Shown piece by piece: positions 12,801 through 24,700 of a stretch of DNA of 64,000 bases. A model generated the notes under the pieces. It was not told the DNA's origin. It searched no databases and worked only from the letters and a program-made list of their open reading frames with translations. The stretch lies in the NCBI GenBank assembly GCA_965637545.1, contig OZ281498.1, forward strand, positions 2,046,001 to 2,110,000, in the 5' to 3' direction. Position 1 is the stretch's first letter; each line of letters begins with the position of its first letter. Position numbers and translations under genes: made by a program. Source of the DNA: Phallusia mammillata. Taxonomy: Eukaryota.

Positions 12801-15507
12801 TCAAACTGAACTGATATTTTTTCTAGTCGCCTTTTTCTTACTTCCTGAAGAGCGTCGAATTCTGCTTTGTTTTCCCTGTTTTTATATGGTAAATTACCAA
12901 AATAGGAACAATATTTTACAACAGTTGCACAAAGACTCTAATGCATCTGTCATCAATATTATAAATCCTAATGTTCTTTCAGCTTAAGTCTGATACCTTT
13001 CACTTTCCTCTGAATCACTGGATAAGTTTTCTTCACTTTTTATGTCAAACTTTATTTGATCAATCCTTTTCTTCACATCTCCATGAAGCATTTTATCGGC
13101 CTGTTCTAAAAACAACTAAATAAGTCAATCCGATACATCAACCATAATTGTAACACTTAAAATAAGTAGATATGCTTTTACATGTAACTGCAATGAACAT
13201 TTAAGTTTCTTTTTACGCAAATTTTTGGTGTGTGGATGTTTCAATGTTTTAACCCAGGGGTGCACATCCTTTTCGCTAATTTGTCAGCATCGCCAATCCA
13301 TATTTCATCTAAGGCTGCTAATCACCGGCATGTTGTGGTTTTATTTGATGCACAGATTGAGCTGCACAGTGTGAAAAACAGTCTTTAACTATTTATGACA
13401 TCATAATTCATCTTGTAACGCTTGTGGCACCTTTTTTTCGCATTGTTTGCACACAATAGGCGTACAAAAAGTCTGGCACATATAGCTACTAGAGCAGTTT
13501 GAAAATCAAAATATTTAGCAAAAACGTTTTATTTCCTTTAAGGCCACCAATCCATATATTTTAATAAACATGTTCAAGGCCACACTAACTCGTCGCTCTG
13601 GCCGTATGTGCCGATCCAGCCGCAGGTTGTGCACCCCTGTCTTAACCTTACACTTGCAAGATAAAATTGCTTAACTCGAAAATAGGCACATGACACAATT
13701 TGTACATTATTTACCAATATATTGATGATTGTCAGATTTGATGAGAATAGAAATAGATGAAAACTTGGCTTCAATTATGTTTAGTGATTCCATAAGTTGA
13801 CGGTGTTTCTGAAAAATACCTTTGCTGAAACATATGCTACACCAATGGTTTACAGTGAATTTTGACCCAAAGTCAATTGAACAAATGTGATATGGTAATT
13901 GTTACCTTGGTAACTTTGGGCTTATTTTTACTTCCAAGTGGTTGACTTGCTGAAAATGCCATTTTGTTAAATTGGGTCCATCTGTAAAAAAATTAAAATT
14001 CAACAACAGACAACAAATTGAAGATGTGCTTCTATGCAGTCATTTGTATTTTGACCGATCAAAATTTAAAAATTGTTTCATCCTATGTGTCATAGCTTTT
14101 CATATGTTCAAAAGCGAAATAAATAAATTAAAAATAAATTCATTTGTACCTTCTCTTTCGTTTTCTTCTTTTTCGTTTGGTGAAACTGGTTTCTGTTACT
14201 TTTACAATTTCATTTGGCAAAACTTGTGAAAGACAGTTTCTTTCAAATGCTGCAGGATTCTGTTGGTATTTCTGTGTATCTGGAATTTCTGGTTGAGTCA
14301 GGTACAGCATGTTTGAGGCAACGCTGTCAGGGGAATTGTTCATGGACTTAGATTCTGTTCTTGGGAAATCCTGCATGGGGATAAATTTAAAATATTATGG
14401 TATATTGTACTTTACAATATTGCCACTTACATCAAATTTTTAATGGCAAAGTGGTAAACAAAATAATGTCTCATATACAAACGATACTCACTGAAATTAC
14501 ATTTATTAGTGATAATAAACAATAAAGGTTTCATAAATAACATTTTAATTTTATGGAAACATAAGGTTTTACAGAATCAGAATACACTAAAACTACATAC
14601 TTCACAAAAATCTACAGTGGGTTTGGAACTTTTAATGACAGCCAGCTCCACACTAAAGTCAGACAGCATTGTTTCATCACTGTCAAAATCCTCACTTGGT
14701 TCATTTGCACTTTTTTCAGTCATCCTGTTAAGCAAAAAAATGATGTTGCAAAGGCTATACAGATGAATCTGGTTAATAACATAATTAATTGGTCAAGATT
14801 GTTTGCAATTAACGTATGGTGACACAAATTTTCACAACAATAAGCTACAATTGGGTTTTACAACCTCTATGCAATTAAGTGGATTATGCAAGAAACTGGA
14901 CTCTTCTGTGTATGTGCAAAGATAACCTTGTGATTAATTATTTCCTGCTTTACTGCTAAACGGTTGTAGGTCAAAACGGAATGCACTGTCTGCAGCTAAC
15001 TATTTGGTTTAACCCAGTGGTTCTTAACCTTTTTTCTTTGCTGCACCCCTTTCAAATCACCAACCAATTTTTGCGCCCCCTGGTTTTTTGTATTTATTTA
15101 GAATAGACCTAATCAACCTTAATGATTCAGCATCCCCGCACCCCCTAGGAACAGTTCTTGCATCCCTTGCGGGGGGGGGGGGGGGTTCGGGGGCGTGCAC
15201 CCATGGTTAAGAACCCCTGGTTTAACCAACGAAACAATGGTTTTCACACAAGTATATTATCTTGTATAAATATATTTTTTATGAATTACCAAACAACAAA
15301 CATAACAGTTTTTTTTGTGCAGCATAATGTAGTTGTTACAAACTATATCGGACAAACTTTTACTTACAGCTGATTAAGAAGATTTCCCAGCGGTTGTGAC
15401 AAAGCATCGAACATATCACAATCAGATTCGAAATCTTCGCTCTGTTTTACAACTTGCCTCTCGCAAACTTCTGATAAATTGTCACTAATTATTGGTTCTA
15501 CTTCCAT
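9831..15507 (-). CDS. ANKRD31: ANKRD31-like protein with RAMA domain and no ankyrin repeats, about 663 aa, 12 coding exons
   Basis: Exons 15507-15368, 14724-14601, 14370-14150, 13981-13906, 13808-13715, 13105-12997, 12875-12749, 12327-12269, 12208-11638, 11318-11184, 10494-10368, 10039-9831. All GT-AG and phase-matched (1992 nt); AATAAA at 9811-9816 on the minus strand. The segment LDFKDMFQRGFVSKGSDVLHCSVQGTNYAATVVHPGLIVSTDHDIYVNPQSWLNAVTKLTFSKDQAFSKIFYNGQSLKDI fits the RAMA pattern. N-terminal FDSDET and C-terminal YLLKCKFLLPSDDEL resemble vertebrate ANKRD31 as recalled. Gene model is firm; the name is moderately confident. Confidence 0.72.
10558..10932. mobile_element. hAT (Ac-type) MITE, 375 bp
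   Basis: TIRs TAGGGATGGGCC / GGCACATCCCTA with an exact 8-bp TSD CATTTCAC (10550-10557 and 10933-10940); in an intron of the ANKRD31-like gene. Confidence 0.92.
13255..13639. mobile_element. hAT (Buster/Charlie-type) MITE, 385 bp
   Basis: TIR CAGGGGTGCACA / TGTGCACCCCTG; 8-bp flanks TTTTAACC / TCTTAACC (7 of 8 match). Confidence 0.88.
15015..15219. mobile_element. hAT (Buster/Charlie-type) MITE, 205 bp, with internal poly-G run
   Basis: TIR CAGTGGTTCTTAACC / GGTTAAGAACCCCTG; exact TSD GTTTAACC. Confidence 0.92.
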
Positions 15508-16021
15508 TATGCTTTCTGGGTTAAACTGTTACACAGAGACGGCGAAAAAACTTACAATTGCAGAACGCATTTCTTTTTCGAAATCCCCGCACACCAAATA
15601 CGTACTTTTAAGGTTCACCTGTGGTACACAAACAATACTTTGAAATGTTTTTTACTGTTTTTCTTTTATTTCATGAGCTTTTGGCTGATGTGAAAATTCA
15701 AAACTACAGAAAATGCTGAAGCATCGAGTGTTTAATATCTACAGCACAGTTAAAACAAGTGTATAAAAAATAACAAATTCAACGCGATAAAAAGTGCAAG
15801 CCTTGCAAGAGGGTACAATTACATAAAACTGAAATGAATGAAAAATAACTTTCCGCAGAAGTCCAATAATACCTCAGATTTAGTTTAGTTGGTATAAATC
15901 GCTATAAAGTTATCCTCAGGAATTCCGTGAAAAAGATAAAACCAGAGAACGCAAATTTAACAAAACAAAAATCTTTCAATATGGGGAAGCCACAATGTGA
16001 ATTAACTGTTGCCCTTGAACG

Positions 16022-16385
16022 CAACAGGGGTTGTGACTTTTTCGTGACACTTGTCACTGTTAGTGACAGGCGTCAGTGACAGGGCTGGAGTGTCACTAAA
16101 TCAGTGACAGAGCGTCATTGAATCAGTGACAGGGTGTCAAAAATAGTGACAGAGCGTCAGTAAATCAGTGACAGGGTGTCAGTAAATCCGTGACAGGGTG
16201 TCAGTGAATCATTGACAGGGCGTCAGTGAATCCGTGACAGGGCGTCAGTAAATCAGTGACAGGGCGTCAGTAAATCAGTGACAGGGTGCTAGTAAATCAG
16301 TGACAGGGTGTCAGTAAATCTGTGACAGGGTGTCATTGACAGGCTATAGGTGACAGCCTGTCACTGAATTATCACAACCCCGTCT
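16022..16385. mobile_element. TIR element with 9-bp TSD and internal minisatellite, overlapping the stop codon of the membrane-protein gene
   Basis: Exact direct repeat CCTTGAACG at 16013-16021 and 16386-16394; inverted ends GGGGTTGTGA (16027) / TCACAACCCC (16372-16381). Confidence 0.8.
16060..16365. repeat. 22-bp minisatellite (CAGTGACAGGGYGTCAGTAAAT)n, about 11 full units plus partial units
   Basis: TGACAG recurs at 16105, 16127, 16147, 16169, 16191, 16213, 16235, 16257, 16279, 16301 and 16323; each unit holds the inverted repeat TGAC(A)-GGG-(Y)GTCA. Confidence 0.95.
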
Positions 16386-18545
16386 CCTTGAACGTGGTAA
16401 CCGCTATTCCATCAGCTTCTGCGACTGTTGCAATTGTGTCATTGTTCATTTCCAAGTTGTCGTTAAACCCCTGTCACAATTATTCCACGTTATGTTACAT
16501 AGGCACTAATAGTCTTACGAAAAATAAATTAACTCCAAAAAACCTTCATGCATTTTTTGTTGAAGTGTCTGCTAATACATTTAACGAAAAAATCCAAGAT
16601 GTTTCTTAAGCCGAATGGTGGGCGACGGGACTTTAAGGGCAAGAGGGGTCTTGGTAGGCCTACACGTAACAAATAAGCGATGGACGCGTGGCCATGTGGG
16701 GATTTTTTATATTGCAGAATGTTTCAGGTTTTTATTGTACAGTAAATAATGTATGCCTTAAATGAACATGATTGTTTTTTACATAAGTTTGTGTCAAAAT
16801 TTGTCCCATTTTGCAAAATGTTCTGCCGGCCCCCAAGAACTGAATTTACAGTTTTGAATTATATTAGGTCTTTAACAAAACGATAAAAACCTCAAATCAA
16901 GTAAGGCCTAAGAGCCTCACCCTGTATTTGCTGGAAAATGTGAACTTCTTTTTACGCATTTTTTCCTTGCTGTCAGAACCCTCACAGCAACAACCGTAGC
17001 ATATACCTGTTTAACAAGCAAATTGATAAGATTAATACGATAGTGTTGTAAATAAGTTGACACATATAAAAACTGTAGACTACTTATATGGAAATCGTCC
17101 TGAACCAACGTATGCTCATTAGACCTATAGACGATTACAGTTGTGGATAAGCATTGCAAACTGAAACTTCCAGCACACTTAGATCAGTCTGTGCTTTTCG
17201 TTATGCAACGGTGACATATATAAATCGATTTCGCCTATATAATGGCATCCTCAGGCTTTGTTGAAATACATTGACAACACAAACGTCAACACATAACACA
17301 AACGTTTCCTGTGTTAAAGTGAGCAAAATTGTTTATTTCTCTTCAAGTCCCATTTAGTCTCGTTTGATTACTGTTAAATATGAAGTAAAGATCACTTACC
17401 TATGAACAGCAACAGAAAAACGGCCGCGGTAAAAGCCACTATGGATACAAAGAAGGTGATGTTGAAATTGTCGGCAAAAATTTCCTTCTTTTGGATGTCG
17501 TTAAAAGTTCTCCCGGTTATTGTGAACAAATACTTGTCCGCTTCAGTGGTGAAGTTGCGTAATCTGAAATAAATTAATTATAACGAGATTGTAAAACCGT
17601 AATTGTAACGATAAACTTATTATAATGAGGATATTATTGGGGATGAACATTAATTCCGATAAATGGGATCAGCGCGTCTGTGCAGACCAGCGATTACGGC
17701 ACACTCAAATTTAAATCATAGTACGCCAGGCCCATTGAAGGTGTAATACCAAATCAGCCTGTCACCAAGCGTTCACCAATTGTATATTACTAAATGGAAA
17801 TAACTGGCCTATTTTTTTTCGTTTAGTTTATTTGCACTGAAGATCAACAAAACCAACAAGGAAATGTGAACGTGTGGGGCAGCGATAGACTTTGTGGTCA
17901 TCGTGTCAGCCACCCCTTACACGCGGTTAGGTAAACAGAATTTCGTCACAAAATACTTTTTTGAAAGCAATGTTTGTTATTTCAGAGAAAAAAAACCTCA
18001 CCCATAATCAACCCTGTCTTTTAAGGTTAACTGTGTGGCAGAATATAAGAAAAGCTTTTTAAAACACTACAAGTTTTGCTTGAGCTGGGATTCGAACCCA
18101 CGACGGGAGTTTATGTAGTAGTATTGCCTCACAAAGTTTTTCAGCAAACGCGCTTTTAAACAACAACAAAAAAATGCTGATGCAAAATATCGGCGAAAGA
18201 TTGAGAAGTTCTTGCCATACTTGTTCAAAGTGCTGATTGTTCATTGGCTGTAAGCTTTTCTGTTACTCTATAAATGCTAGAACACATAGGTAGCCACCGT
18301 TACATGACATGCAAAAAACTAGAAGCAAGCATGGCGTCTGCCGTCGACGTCATGCACTATAAAGCTTCTTTTAAACGTCACAATACTCAACAACAATGAA
18401 AACTCACATTTCGCTGAATGACATCTTGAAGCTGTACTTGCCTTATCAAAACAGCCAAAGCATCGCAGAAATTTTGTCGAATGTAACAGAGTTTCAGGCA
18501 AGCGCCCGCGTAGTTAACAGGAAGAAAAAGCCATGATTGAAGAGC
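16372..18545 (-). CDS. Single-pass (type I-like) membrane protein of unknown family; 3' exons only
   Basis: Exons about 18545-18408 (5' edge uncertain), 18030-18002, 17563-17400, 17006-16921, 16470-16372, phase-matched. Protein reads ...QDVIQRNLTLKDRVDYGLRNFTTEADKYLFTITGRTFNDIQKKEIFADNFNIT-FFVSIVAFTAAVFLLLFIGICYGCCC-EGSDSKEKMRKKKFTFSSKYRGFNDNLEMNNDTIATVAEADGIAVTTFKETGL*. It has luminal N-glycosylation sequons, one TM helix, a juxtamembrane Cys cluster and a basic stop-transfer stretch. Confidence 0.75.
18060..18120 (-). mobile_element. Possible tRNA-derived SINE remnant
   Basis: Pol III B-box GGTTCGAATCC at 18088-18098 (another at 26552-26562, plus strand); no convincing A-box or cloverleaf. 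Confidence 0.3.
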
Positions 18546-19472
18546 TGGCGAGTCACGAACCTTTACAGGGGATTCCCCTACTAGTCGAGGAAGTCAACGA
18601 AGCTCTTTGCAAGTAGCAGCTCTGAGTCCCTTGAATCGTTTGCGCTGGTTTGATAAATTGAGAGATTACCAACAATGAATGTCAGAGTACAGTAGCTTAG
18701 GTAAAACTTGCACCGCCTGTGCGTGACGTATAAAGGTTACTTTGGTATATTTTGGCTCGATTCAATTTGACTTGCAAACACATTGCATTGGATCAAACGT
18801 AAACATTTCCATAACGTTCATCCTGAACTCTTTAAAATATTCAGGTCATCCACTAATCAGTGTCAATTCTTGCAGGAAGAATTGAAATGAAGTTAACGAA
18901 GAACCTAAAGCACAGTGCACGTTTTAGAAGTCCCAGGCTTCAAGCAAAACTGCTGTGACACAAACAATTTACCATTTACCAGAGGGGATGACAGCTTTAG
19001 CGCTGGTTGAATCTGACACAATGCTGAAAGTAAACGAGGGTGACATTTTAACAAGTTAAATTTGTGTTGAGAAAACTGGCACGTTCGGTTTTCAAACAAG
19101 ACAAAAGGTTTGCACCAAAATGTTGTACATCAGACGCGAATACCAACGCCTGACCTTTCACCTAGTAAAGGTAACACGCGGTTCAACCTTCATATGACCT
19201 TGACGCGTTTTTGCGCCTTAACCACGCATAGCAACGACTATCATATTGATGTTCCGGCTTGTGGCGCTTAAAAAATGTTGTTCCGACATCGTCATTAAGT
19301 ATTTTGAAGGTTAACTAAAGGTCAAATCCAAATCCAGCACTGGGCCTGTACAGCTGGCTTTCCGCTATGCACAACCAACTTAAACAAATTTAAAAAATGA
19401 ACGAATAAGTTAAATTACAACGACAATAAGGCAAAGAGTTGTAAGGCTGGTTAGGGTTAAAGTTCACACAAA

Positions 19473-19596
19473 CGGGCCTGACTTTACAATCGACTTCATT
19501 TGCGTCACAATTTCACCAACTTTCGGGCCTAATTCGAGCCTTGTTTTAAACCATTTCGGTACCAGACACGAAATTTCAGATTCAGGCCCGTTTACA
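19473..19596. mobile_element. Small MITE remnant
   Basis: Inverted ends AAACGGGCCTGA / TCAGGCCCGTTT; TSD not evident. Confidence 0.6.
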
Positions 19597-19768
19597 CTAA
19601 TAAAGCAACTCAACGGCTGAATAGTTTAGGGCATTTAATGAAACTTTGTTAAAATAGTCGGATGCCATTTAATTTACAAGGTCGCACTTTATTATTCAAC
19701 ACAATACTGAACCATTGACGACAATCGACGGCAGAACACGGTAAGGGCACGGTGGCATGCAAGATAAG

Positions 19769-19823
19769 AAGCGGATTCCGACGAAAAATAAGCGGATTCC
19801 GACGAAAAATAAGCGGATTCCGC
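19769..19823. repeat. 21-bp tandem repeat AAGCGGATTCCGACGAAAAAT, about 2.5 copies
   Basis: Directly visible; ends in the near-palindrome GCGGATTCCGC. Confidence 0.9.
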
Positions 19824-21162
19824 GGTAAAGTTAGGCCGCTCTATGTACACTGGTGGTGTGTGCTGGCTGGGAATGGACGGAAAAAAGAAAATTACGGAAC
19901 GAGCGGAATTTAGGGAGAAATGTGTGACTTGCGAAACACATTTGTTGCACGTAACGGCAATGGCGGTTTTTAAAAAAAAATACTTGGTATAACTCGTTTA
20001 TAATCATTTAGACATGCTAAAAAAAGGGGTTAAAAGCCTATTTTTTTCTTTACAACCAGTGCGTTCTTAATTAAACTTGTCGGTGAACAATGTTTCATTT
20101 AAACCCACATTTTACCAAATTATTACTTTTGTAAATAAACATTTTCTTGCGATGCGCGACGAAGCAGAAAAACGAGCGCTAAAAATCTCTTGACAAAAAC
20201 ACAGGAACGTGCAAAGAAGGAAAGTATATATATGACAACAGTACACAGGAGATATTAATAGGCGAAGGCAGTTCCCATAGAAATTAACACACTAGCACCG
20301 GTGACGTAAAAGTACACACATGTTGGACGGAGTTTGACAAAATTCTTGAATAATTTTATTGAAAAGTTAGTGACAGTTTTTACTGTTTTAATTACCTTTG
20401 TTTTCAGAAAATATGTTTACCTCGGGTAAAAGTAAAAACCTTACCACCAAAGGTGTTTCCAAAAACAAAACCACACTGATATGTTTTTCTTAATCTCAGT
20501 GTTCATATTTAGACATTGCATTCAATTGAAATCTCGTGCAATATAAAATTCGGAACTTTAAACTGAAAGTGCTTTTCGTAAATTGTTATGCTAAAACTTT
20601 TAAATGGGAAAATAAAATATGACAAAATTAAATTCAAAATGTCGGACCAAAATTTATTTCTAGTGACTTAGTTGTAATATTTTTAACAGCTTGTACCTTC
20701 CATCGTGAGTAAAACCCCACATAATAATAAAATATAACAAACACCATTAAATTCGGGAAATTTGTGTGTGTGACACTGTCAGAGTGATGGCACTAAGTTA
20801 CAGAGTTTAGGAATTGCCATAATTGTTTCGAGCGTAAAAAAGTTTTGTGAAACACTGGAGTGAAACAACGCTTTTACTGGCACAGGGTACAGAAATCGGA
20901 TGAGAGCACCGTATTACACGGATAATTATACGGACAATTCACAATGAGCTGATAATGTAATAATCGAAGTCTTGCTTTAAAGTTTAAACCAACCCTAAAA
21001 AACATAATTTTCATCATAAAAAAAGTTTACTACGTAATACTGATAGAATAGAATTTGTGGAGCAATAAACGCCACAAAAAACTAAAAGGAGTTTGCCAGA
21101 AAATGTTGCAAACAAATGTTTGTTCGGCTTCTAAATCAGCTTATACTGTTGATGTTCTGAAC

Positions 21163-21656
21163 CAGTGTTTCTTAACCTGGGGTTCGCGGACCCCCAAGGG
21201 GTGCATGAGATGGTTTCAGGGGGTCCACGGAGGGAAATATGTTAAGTATCATTAACCAACAGAAGAATATTTTTAAGTTTCTCAACCGTTTTTACAATCC
21301 TGCATGCGAGTGCGCGCTGTTTATTACACCTTAATTATGCCAAGAACAATTACTTTTTGCGATTGTCTGCCCTATTGTGATATCACACATGGACAATAGA
21401 CTTTACAGGACGATTTGTGAAGTTATATATACCAGAAATATTATCAATTCGATGGGTTGGCCACTATACGTTACAGAGACGTCATTGATTTTAAAGGACT
21501 GTGAAGGCGGATTTAAATGCTTCAAAAGCATGACAGGGTGGTATAATGCAAGAAACGTGAAACATAAAAAGACTAATGGTAAATTGCGTTGGGGGTCCGC
21601 AGACTTACAAAATTCATAAAAGGGGTCCGTGACTACAAAAAGGTTAAGAACCACTG
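21163..21656. mobile_element. hAT (Buster/Charlie-type) MITE, 494 bp
   Basis: TIR CAGTGTTTCTTAACC / GGTTAAGAACCACTG; flanks TTCTGAAC / CTCTAAAC (6 of 8 match). Confidence 0.85.
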
Positions 21657-21761: not shown

Positions 21762-24700
21762 TCATCCAGCGTAACTGCCACACTCAGCAGTCATCCTCTC
21801 CGCCTGCATCTGACCGTAACGATGGTGACGGTGGTGGTGCGCCGCCTCGTGGCCGGGCGACGGCTGGTCGTCATGGGAACGATCGAACGTGACGTCATTG
21901 TCCATTTCGTCATCGTCGATGTCGTCACGTGACTCGTCGTGCTGGTTCGTGGAGTTACTGGTGTGATGGGACGGTTGCTGTGCAGGATGGTGGTGCTGGT
22001 GGTTGCTGGTGTTGTGCTGGTTCACCAGAGCCAGAATAGAATGGTTGACAGCAGCCATCTCGAGCGCCAAAGTCATCGGATCTTCCTTCTTGGGTATCAC
22101 AAGCGCTGGAGGGCACTAAAGAGCAAAAATACGACAACTTGAAACCGGGTTCTATTTCAAAACGATTTAATTAATTTGAGAACTTTTGATGCAACCCGTA
22201 TAACCAGTGGTGGGATTCAGCCGGTTCGCACCGGTTCTGTAGAATCGTCTCACGACATTTTAGGAGAGCAGCGAACCGGTTAGCATTACCGGTTACTGTC
22301 AATGTACGGTTGTAACAGAACCGGCTGACAAATATGACTTTTGTGATAGCACCGCCTGACAAAAGAATTGAATCTCACCACTGCGTACAGCCCGACTCCA
22401 ATGCATGAGACAATTCGCCAAATTCTTGAACGTTGGAAAGTCCTAACTTTACAACATTAAGATATTTCTGGTAAGACATGCTTTTAACTCTGTCAGAGAC
22501 TGGGCTCATTGAGCAATCCCCGAGAAACGCCACTTACCCTTTCGTGTGCCCCAGGAGTGTTGTCTCCACCCGAGTGACTGTCGTTAGAGTTGCACGACGG
22601 AGTGGGAGAAACAGTTGAACTTCTGCGTGGACTGTGAGATTGATGTTGGTCCATCGCTTCAATGTGCTCTAGGAATAATTAATAGCAATGTAAAGCAGTG
22701 GATCTTGACGCTTTTCGCGCTGATACCGATTGAGGATTCTTAAACTGTACTTGTATCACTTGCCTACAATGATACTTAACACCCAAACTCGTATCCCTCT
22801 GGTGGCCCCCGAGTCCACATAAATGCTGTTTAATTGTGTATTTCCATTCAATTCTTATAGCTATCGACTCATGTTAGGGGTTAAACCAGATAGTGTAGGG
22901 CGAAGTAGTTAAGGTCAGTCGTGGACGCAGGTTAGTTCAAACACTTGTATAATAAAAAGAAACAAACAAAGTGACCACAAGGTCGCATTTTATAAAGAGT
23001 TTATGAGTAAGGTACCTGCAAATATTAAGGACCACTGGGAGTGGCAACACAGAAAACATAATTACTTGTTGCTTGTTGCAAAATCCACCCATCAAAACCA
23101 ATAACTCGCGCATTTCGGGTTTATATTAACTTAATTGCACTGAACTAATTCCGTGCAAAGCCGCAGCGGTCATCCGATACACCGACGATTAAGCGTTGAC
23201 TCATCCGACATATAACTTTTACCGCCCAAGGGAAACCGCATGTGGAAATTTCGACGGCTTTTAAGGCATTGTGACGTCACAGTTTTCCTTAGTTTACGTC
23301 ACAATTTACAGTGAATGACTCGAGGCGGGGGAAAGGTTTAAGTCGATCAGGAAGAAATAAGGAAGGAATTATTGTTTGTTTGTTTGTTTACATAAATTTA
23401 AATTGTACTTGAGATTATTTTCAGAAATTTTTCGTCGTTTTCAAAGAATTTTCGTAACTTTTTTTGGCCTCAAGTTACGGATTTTTCTGGCCACTTTTTA
23501 GACGGTTTTGGAAATCGTTGACAGAAGTGAGCGGAATTTTCGAAACAAGAATGTCGAAATACATGAAATTGGTTTAATTGTCATTTTTCGTCTTCCTCAC
23601 AAAATACATGAAAAATTTCCCTTTAGATATCTTATAACGCCGTTTTAAATTACGATGTGTTTTAGTAATCTCTACAGATTATTACCCAATGTATTTAAAC
23701 AGACACACGGCACGAAAACCAGCTTTACTAACAAAAAACTGCCACTGGGGTATCTTACAACGACATATAAGCATCCTATAATTCAAACAAACCATTTGCC
23801 ATCATCATCATTGGAGCAATACTTTTGTGCACGTAACTATTGTTGTTAATTTCTTTGCTAACTTACCAATGTGTCTCCTACGCTTGTCGTCCTTTCGTCT
23901 GTTCGCGAACCAGTTGTAAACTTTCACTGTGGTGACCTTGTCCAAGTCTGATAACACGCCACCTACAAAAAAACACATCAGTATGAGAAAACGATAGGTA
24001 AACTAGTTGTATAACAGTGTGTAATAGAATACACTAGAATGATAACAGTGTTAGCCGAAACTTTGGCCCGCAGTTTGGATATCTTTGCATTTGAAATATG
24101 AATGATTACAGTTAACAATATCTGTATCAGAGTTGAGGCGTTTTTGTCGTGTTATTTCAAGGTTTAGGTTTTTAAACGTGGTATACGTTGACAGTTAGCC
24201 ACATTAAAGGCTTGGAAGGCTGGATATATTGGCCACAATATACAAAGGTTATCAATTCCTGATCTATATGAACAAAGACAAGTTCATAAAAGAGTAAATG
24301 AATGTTTAGGTTGCAATAAAAACCACATACTGTATGTCGTTTACAGTTAGAAAATATATTTGCAATAAAATATAGAAGATTGCATTCACTGTAACAAATC
24401 AGGGAAAATAAACAATTTAAAAACATTTCCGCAGGAGTTTTACGGAATAAAATCTGTCTGTTATATTGTAAAGATTAGATTGAAAACAACTTTAAATATA
24501 GAAACAAATTTCCGTATGGCGAGAATCGACATGTCAGAAACCTAAACAAACACCAGATCTGTAATGAGCTTGGTGTTGTTAAACATGCAGTAAGATTAAT
24601 GCCAAAAACGGTATATTGACAGGCAAGCATTTGTTTGCTAGAATTTTTGCTGTTACGCGCTTTTTTTCTAAATACCTTATCACAAAACGTGTAATGGCAT

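What the first reader, a model, noticed from the sequence alone, without database searches (positions are those of the whole stretch)
16002..16394. Transposon insertion rewrote a membrane protein's C-terminus into a PDZ-ligand-like ETGL
Seen: the 9-bp direct repeat CCTTGAACG flanks a 364-bp TIR element. One copy lies inside the last coding exon (codons T-F-K). The element's end supplies the codons for E-T-G-L-TGA, with the stop inside the TIR GGGGTTGTGA. Removing the element and one TSD restores ...TTFKGNS* with TAA at 16002-16004. Known: x-S/T-x-hydrophobic-COOH, often with E at -3, is the class I PDZ-binding consensus. Inference: a TE created a new interaction motif on a cytoplasmic tail and supplies the whole proximal 3' UTR.
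Basis: partly seen in the sequence, partly recalled or inferred. Interest (0 to 1): 0.75.

Follow-up and report, generated by a model that had tools for sequence, protein, structure and literature searches.

The report
Transposon insertion rewrote a protein tail
A small jumping-gene remnant landed ten bases before the stop codon of a small sea-squirt membrane-protein gene, swapping its last three amino acids for four new ones and lengthening the 3' untranslated region; this is a known kind of event, and the proposed new binding motif is only a loose consensus match.

Summary
A 364-bp, high-copy element with terminal inverted repeats (16022-16385) is flanked by a perfect 9-bp repeat. It sits inside the last coding exon of a minus-strand gene. 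RNA-type contigs from two studies show a four-exon, GT..AG-spliced transcript. It encodes a 121-aa single-pass membrane protein ending ...TTFKETGL, with the stop (16372-16374) inside the inverted repeat. Both element junctions are transcribed. Two independent DNA runs carry both junctions, and no empty allele was seen.

Three things were not settled:
- **Ancestral tail:** it is inferred only from insertion logic. The one detectable relative is too distant to show its C-terminus.
- **PDZ ligand:** ETGL fits the loose class I consensus, which roughly 3% of random tails fit by my estimate. Nothing tests binding.
- **Superfamily:** the duplication could be 7, 8 or 9 bp. The layout fits Rehavkus-type Mutator elements and fails Merlin's 5'-GG end.

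Verdict: a real but ordinary case of a transposon changing a coding end and a 3' UTR. Low-to-moderate interest.

The parts
16013..16021 (.). Left copy of the target-site duplication CCTTGAACG. Before the insertion it was followed by the old codons G-N-S-stop.
   Evidence: (family D10)
16386..16394 (.). Right copy of the duplication. On the minus strand it lies inside the coding sequence (codons T-F-K plus the first base of E).
16022..16385 (.). 364-bp non-autonomous element with terminal inverted repeats (MITE-like) and no ORF. It is highly repeated in the genome.
   Evidence: In one search the depth over the element is 40-380 times that of the flanks. The unique DNA contigs stop at 16050, and another copy's flank starts at 16386.
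16022..16049 (+). Left terminal inverted repeat (core GGGGTTGTGA at 16027-16036).
   Evidence: (I6), alignment
16359..16385 (-). Right terminal inverted repeat (core at 16372-16381). It supplies codons (E)TGL and the TGA stop.
16090..16335 (+). 22-bp minisatellite of 11.3 units. Each unit holds a small palindrome (TGACA-GGG-TGTCA). The array abuts the right inverted repeat.
16372..16374 (-). Present stop codon TGA, inside the inverted repeat.
16002..16004 (-). Inferred pre-insertion stop codon TAA.
15782..16470 (-). Last exon. Coding part is 16470-16372. The 3' UTR then runs through the whole element to at least 15782.
   Evidence: X6 contig 21 covers 16315-16469 and is spliced to the upstream exons. 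X9 contig 23 covers 15782-16211, and X6 contig 17 covers 15899-16075.
16921..17006 (-). Exon 3 (juxtamembrane CYGCCC cluster and a basic stretch).
   Evidence: joints 16469/16920 and 17003/17397; (GT..AG)
17400..17563 (-). Exon 2 (N-terminal part with an NFT sequon, plus the transmembrane segment).
   Evidence: It is conserved at 42-44% identity with P0002.
18408..18717 (-). Exon 1 as far as the RNA contig reaches: 5' UTR with in-frame stops, and the ATG at 18424-18422.

Best explanation
A non-autonomous cut-and-paste DNA transposon inserted into the last coding exon of a small gene, ten bases upstream of its stop codon. The element is 364 bp, with short imperfect terminal inverted repeats, a 22-bp minisatellite next to one end and a 7-9-bp target duplication. 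Most likely it derives from the Rehavkus/NOF branch of Mutator elements that other notes report in this genome.

The gene has four exons on the minus strand. It encodes a 121-aa single-pass membrane protein, predicted N-terminus out and C-terminus in the cytoplasm.

Transcription now reads from the duplicated target into the element's inverted repeat. That adds E-T-G-L and a TGA in place of G-N-S-TAA. The rest of the element and the old 3' UTR became the new 3' UTR, at least 590 nt instead of at least 220 nt.

Shown:
- the element, its repeat status and its boundaries;
- the splicing and the reading frame;
- transcription across both junctions;
- presence of the insertion in every sample examined.

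Inferred:
- the ancestral GNS end;
- the membrane topology;
- the superfamily;
- that the amino-acid change is neutral or nearly so, rather than a selected new motif.
For: - **Sequence anatomy:**
- **Chance test of the flanking repeat:** 17 of 20,000.
- **Multi-copy element:** in two DNA runs the depth over 16000-16399 is 40-380 times that of the flanks. Unique contigs stop at 16050, which means the sequence from about 16021 onward is shared with other copies. A contig from another copy diverges at 16386.
- **Splicing:** RNA-type contigs from two studies carry joints 16469/16920 and 17003/17397 with GT..AG on the minus strand. These joints are absent from the DNA runs. One 716-nt contig links exon 1, exon 2, exon 3 and the last exon down to 16315.
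- **Left junction transcribed:** contigs cover 15782-16211 and 15899-16075.
- **Reading frame:** a 366-nt ORF with three GT..AG introns, one hydrophobic 19-mer (mean hydropathy 2.75), and a CYGCCC plus basic cluster after it.
- **Exon 2 is conserved as protein:** P0002, from a distant eukaryote, gave E 2.5e-7 against 1.84 billion proteins, with 23 of 55 residues invariant and the exon ending at the same place.
- **Insertion in all samples:** both DNA runs from other studies carry both junctions, with no variants in the new tail.
- **Rehavkus layout:** 9-bp duplication, inverted repeats of 26-400 bp and a minisatellite before the 3' repeat (PMC6446971).
Against: - No empty allele and no orthologue ending in GNS was observed, so the ancestral state rests on transposition logic alone.
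- The outermost 4-5 nt of the two ends are not complementary, and the duplication length is ambiguous (7-9 bp).
- No other copy could be read, so the family's duplication length and its autonomous partner are untested.
- All reads were contigs, which give no strand, no 3' end and no allele frequencies.
- The inner part of the element (16211-16315) is covered only by short contigs that could come from other copies.
- Protein existence is inferred, not shown.
Confidence: 0.8

Rival explanations
1. One reading: the transposon-born ETGL tail is a working class I PDZ-binding motif that gave the protein a new partner and was retained for that reason.
For: - The tail fits X-[S/T]-X-hydrophobic-COOH with E at -3 (the consensus is from general knowledge).
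- The tail is predicted to be cytoplasmic, because a Cys cluster and basic residues follow the membrane segment.
- The insertion is present in all five data sets examined: the window, two DNA runs and two RNA-type runs.
Against: - The consensus is loose. From amino-acid frequencies, about 3% of random tails fit it (my estimate).
- One of the six read-in frames of this element gives such a tail, so this is close to what chance allows.
- Gly at -1 is not a preferred residue.
- There is no binding, conservation or selection evidence.
- Only three residues were replaced, so a neutral change is the simpler reading.
Confidence: 0.06
2. The ORF is not a real protein-coding gene (a non-coding or spurious transcript), so the insertion changed only an RNA.
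For: - No Pfam family reaches its threshold.
- No full-length protein of this kind was found in the 1.84-billion-protein library or by the word search.
- The ORF is short (121 aa).
Against: - Exon 2 is conserved at the amino-acid level with a distant relative, including the NxT sequon next to the membrane segment and the place where the exon ends.
- There are in-frame stops just upstream of an ATG with A at -3.
- The frame stays open across three introns.
Confidence: 0.08
3. There was no insertion. The 22-bp array expanded in place, the 9-bp repeat is coincidence, and ETGL is the original end.
For: The terminal 4-5 nt are not complementary, and no empty site was seen.
Against: - The sequence is many-fold over-represented in two DNA runs, and other copies' flanks begin at the inferred ends.
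- The inverted repeats and the perfect flanking repeat sit exactly at those ends. The chance estimate is about 1e-3 even with generous offsets.
- Excising the element restores an open frame with a stop three codons on.
Confidence: 0.03

Closest known systems
MITE or other transposon insertions that supply a new C-terminus, stop codon and 3' UTR to a host gene (for example MITEs in plant gene ends, or Alu-derived coding ends in primates; from general knowledge)
   Same: A short non-autonomous element lies inside the last coding exon. Read-through runs into the element to an early stop, and the element is carried in the mature mRNA.
   Different: Only three residues are replaced by four. The stop lies inside the terminal inverted repeat itself. 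The host is a small tunicate-type membrane protein that I could not find in the protein libraries searched.
Rehavkus / NOF (Foldback-type) branch of the Mutator superfamily
   Same: A duplication of up to 9 bp, short-to-moderate inverted repeats and a minisatellite placed just before one inverted repeat (PMC6446971). Earlier notes of this scan report such autonomous elements with satellite-built arms in the same genome.
   Different: There is no transposase here. Similarity of the ends to an autonomous copy could not be tested. The array runs in one orientation only, not as two inverted arms.
Merlin superfamily
   Same: Merlin makes 8- or 9-bp duplications and occurs in animals (PMC8101967).
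   Different: Merlin ends start with a conserved 5'-GG. Here the inferred ends start CA.. and AG.., and the GGGG run begins 4-5 nt inside.
Class I PDZ-binding C-terminal motifs
   Same: -E-T-G-L-COOH fits X-[S/T]-X-hydrophobic on a predicted cytoplasmic tail.
   Different: There is no evidence of binding, conservation or selection, and the motif arose from fixed transposon sequence.

Membership tests
Non-autonomous TIR (class II) element / MITE | Terminal inverted repeats at both ends | tested here: met
   10-nt perfect core, about 23 nt at 78%. The outermost 4-5 nt do not match.
Non-autonomous TIR (class II) element / MITE | Target-site duplication directly flanking the ends | tested here: met
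   Perfect 9-bp repeat at 16013-21 and 16386-94. Chance is about 1e-3.
Non-autonomous TIR (class II) element / MITE | Small, no coding capacity, many copies | tested here: met
   364 bp with stops in all frames. Depth is 40-380 times the flanks in two DNA runs. No second copy lies in the window.
Mutator / Rehavkus | 9-bp target-site duplication | tested here: inconclusive
   Nine bp is the maximal reading. The complementary G (16021) and C (16386) allow 7 or 8 bp. Other copies could not be read.
Mutator / Rehavkus | Minisatellite just before one inverted repeat | tested here: met
   The 22-bp array of 11.3 units ends 24 nt before the right inverted repeat. Feature as described in PMC6446971.
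Mutator / Rehavkus | Ends match those of an autonomous element encoding a PHD-finger Mutator-type transposase | not testable with these tools
   Autonomous copies are only known from earlier notes on other windows, and their sequence cannot be read here.
Merlin | Inverted repeats begin with a conserved 5'-GG | tested here: not met
   The ends inferred from the duplication start CA.. and AG... Criterion from PMC8101967.
Class I PDZ ligand | Free C-terminus X-[S/T]-X-hydrophobic | tested here: met
   ...K-E-T-G-L-stop.
Class I PDZ ligand | Tail is cytoplasmic | tested here: inconclusive
   Prediction only: no signal peptide, an NFT sequon at the N-terminus, and a Cys cluster and basic residues after the membrane segment.
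Class I PDZ ligand | Binds a PDZ domain and the motif is conserved | not testable with these tools
   No binding data. The C-terminus of the only relative (L001/L008) cannot be recognised.
SMIM5/18/22 (Pfam PF15831) | Score at or above Pfam's gathering threshold | tested here: not met
   20.7-20.9 bits against a cut-off of 29.3, over the membrane segment only. P0002 gives no hit.

The most novel reading that the evidence does not exclude
The inverted repeat of this transposon family encodes ...TGL-stop in one frame. At this locus it created a working class I PDZ ligand on a cytoplasmic tail, and the insertion spread because of that new interaction. That would be a short linear motif born directly from a transposon end. 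The same insertion also placed the stop codon in the closing stem of a 364-nt, strongly folded RNA domain (-131 kcal/mol, z = -8.8), which could additionally affect termination or mRNA fate.
Probability: 0.05. Interest if true: 0.6.

Novelty: new member of a known kind. Interest (0 to 1): 0.25.

Why it matters
This is a clean, RNA-supported example of a transposon changing both the end of a protein and its 3' UTR in a compact chordate genome. It also brings to light a small membrane-protein gene that I could not find in the protein libraries searched. If the new tail were shown to bind a PDZ protein, it would be a neat case of a short interaction motif created by a mobile element. As it stands, the change is most simply neutral and the phenomenon is well known.

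Tried and rejected
- **Pfam on the three coding exons:** only a sub-threshold SMIM5/18/22 match over the membrane segment, so no family was assigned.
- **ESM Atlas on exon 2:** nothing above 0.80.
- **Word search with the 61-aa open stretch around exon 2:** no candidates. The length filter (34-107 aa) would also hide a 121-aa protein.
- **Exhaustive representative search with exon 2:** the only true relative is P0002. P0003 and P0004 are chance hits to repeat proteins, and P0001 gives no alignment.
- **Loci carrying P0002 (L001-L010):** all are the same distant locus. They share no nucleotide similarity with the window. Exons 3 and 4 are not recognisable beyond a short 'GICY' junction. No neighbouring gene is shared within 5 kb. 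The orthologue's C-terminus could therefore not be read.
- **Scans for the 22-bp unit:** zero hits in metagenome contigs and in viral contigs.
- **Exact look-ups of three window ORFs, hoping to fetch other assemblies of this locus:** none on record (one search had a mistyped start).
- **Rfam on 15500-18800:** nothing.
- **Literature:** searches on ascidian MITEs and on transposon-born PDZ motifs found nothing specific.
- It was translated only inside scripts to fix the frame.

Full report
**What is in the sequence**

The 9-mer CCTTGAACG occurs at 16013-16021 and at 16386-16394, and the 364 bp between them form a discrete unit. The unit starts and ends with an inverted repeat. Its perfect core, GGGGTTGTGA, lies at 16027-16036 and, reverse-complemented, at 16372-16381. 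With mismatches the repeat extends to about 23 nt (pair I6).

Most of the interior (16090-16335) is a 22-bp minisatellite of 11.3 units at 86% match. Each unit holds a small palindrome, and the array ends 24 nt before the right inverted repeat. As single-stranded DNA or RNA the element folds far better than shuffled controls (z = -8.5 and -8.8).

A flanking repeat of 9 bp or more this close to both cores turned up in only 17 of 20,000 random pairs of window segments. The window holds no second copy.

**Evidence that it is a mobile, multi-copy element, and where it ends**

I laid contigs of two DNA runs and two RNA-type runs from four different studies on 15600-21599.

- In both DNA runs the summed depth over 16000-16399 is 40 to 380 times that of the unique flanks.
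- In both DNA runs the unique contig coming from the left stops at 16050. With 31-letter words, this means the sequence from about 16021-16022 onward is shared with other copies.
- One contig from another copy matches up to 16386 and then runs into unrelated sequence.

The ends inferred from the duplication are therefore supported to within a base.

There is one caveat. Base 16021 (G) and base 16386 (C) are complementary to each other. They could be the last bases of the element rather than of the target, so the duplication is 7, 8 or 9 bp. The outermost 4-5 nt (CAACA versus AGAC) do not pair.

**The host gene**

The RNA-type contigs carry joints that the DNA contigs lack. These are 16469/16920 and 17003/17397, both GT..AG on the minus strand. 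One 716-nt contig links 18717-18408, 17563-17397, the 84-nt third exon (16920-17003, placed from the two joints and the contig's own numbering) and 16469-16315.

Translating that model inside a script gives a 366-nt ORF with three GT..AG introns. Its features are:

- an ATG at 18424-18422, with in-frame stops just upstream and A at -3;
- no signal peptide;
- an NFT sequon near the N-terminus;
- one hydrophobic 19-mer;
- a CYGCCC cluster and a basic run right after it;
- a tail of about 59 residues ending ...TTFKETGL.

This predicts a 121-aa single-pass protein with its C-terminus in the cytoplasm.

The gene lies between HMBOX1 and the gene that starts at 15507.

**Is it really coding?**

Pfam gives only a sub-threshold SMIM5/18/22 match over the membrane segment, and the Atlas gives nothing.

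The exhaustive search of 1.84 billion representatives with exon 2 found one true relative, P0002 (E 2.5e-7). P0002 is an ORF call over the equivalent exon in metagenome and Logan contigs of a distant, unidentified eukaryote. It shares 23 of 55 residues with the window's exon 2. The shared features include the NxT sequon next to the membrane segment, the membrane segment itself, and an exon ending at the same ...IG position. This conservation argues for a real protein.

No full-length annotated protein was found.

**What the insertion did**

The right copy of the duplication encodes T-F-K plus the first base of the next codon. Reading on into the inverted repeat gives E-T-G-L and TGA at 16372-16374. 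So three residues were replaced by four.

The element is transcribed:

- The spliced contig runs 71 nt into it from the right.
- Contigs from both RNA-type runs bridge the left junction (15782-16211 and 15899-16075).

The 3' UTR therefore grew from at least 220 nt to at least 590 nt. The stop codon now sits in the stem that closes the folded element.

Both DNA runs, which come from other studies, carry both junctions with no variants in the new tail. No joint skipping the element is listed. Contigs can hide rare alleles, so this shows presence, not fixation.

**What could not be shown**

- **Ancestral GNS end:** it rests on transposition logic only. The contigs carrying P0002 are too diverged. 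They share no nucleotide similarity, exons 3 and 4 are not recognisable beyond a 'GICY' junction, and no neighbour is shared.
- **Other copies of the element:** none could be fetched, so the family's duplication length is untested.

**The PDZ idea**

ETGL fits the class I consensus (general knowledge), and the tail is plausibly cytoplasmic. But from amino-acid frequencies about 3% of random tails fit it (my estimate). Of the six ways to read into this element, one gives such a tail. Nothing here bears on binding or selection. I put the idea at about 5-6%.

**Superfamily**

Merlin has 8-9-bp duplications but ends that begin 5'-GG (PMC8101967). That feature is not met at the inferred ends.

Rehavkus-type Mutator elements have 9-bp duplications, inverted repeats of 26-400 bp and a minisatellite before the 3' repeat (PMC6446971). 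This matches the layout here. Earlier notes of this scan report Rehavkus/NOF-type elements with satellite-built arms in this same genome. That is a lead, not a test. P or hAT elements (7-8 bp) are not excluded.

**Verdict**

The insertion, the rewritten end and the new 3' UTR are well supported, and the functional motif remains speculation. This is a new member of a known kind of event and of low-to-moderate interest.

Noticed in passing
window 16372-18424 (-): The 121-aa single-pass membrane-protein gene has no full-length counterpart in the 1.84-billion-protein library, only an exon-level relative (P0002). It appears to be an unannotated, lineage-restricted small membrane protein with a CYGCCC juxtamembrane cluster.
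   Followed up: partly
window 17600-17800 and 21000-21600: These are extremely repeated sequences, with summed contig depth up to about 23,000 against about 24 in the flanks. They lie in intron 1 of the small gene and upstream of it.
   Followed up: no
window 17741-18086: Both DNA runs hold contigs that skip 344 bp here, some with 39 other letters in between. This is either a structural variant or other copies of a composite repeat. The skipped part ends next to a tRNA-like T-arm sequence near 18075-18105.
   Followed up: no
window 17563: The X9 RNA-type contig begins exactly at the exon 2 acceptor, whereas the X6 contig continues into exon 1. This may reflect an alternative first exon or spliced-leader trans-splicing, which would remove the ATG.
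   Followed up: no
window 20716-21000: An RNA-type contig (X6) lies here, downstream of the last HMBOX1 coding exon at about 21765-22115. It is probably the HMBOX1 3' UTR.
   Followed up: no
window 19769-19822: A perfect 21-bp tandem repeat of 2.6 copies.
   Followed up: no
L001 1970-1976: In the distant relative's locus, the donor after the exon-2 equivalent reads GC, not GT (G|GCAAGT). It could be a GC-AG intron or a decaying copy.
   Followed up: no
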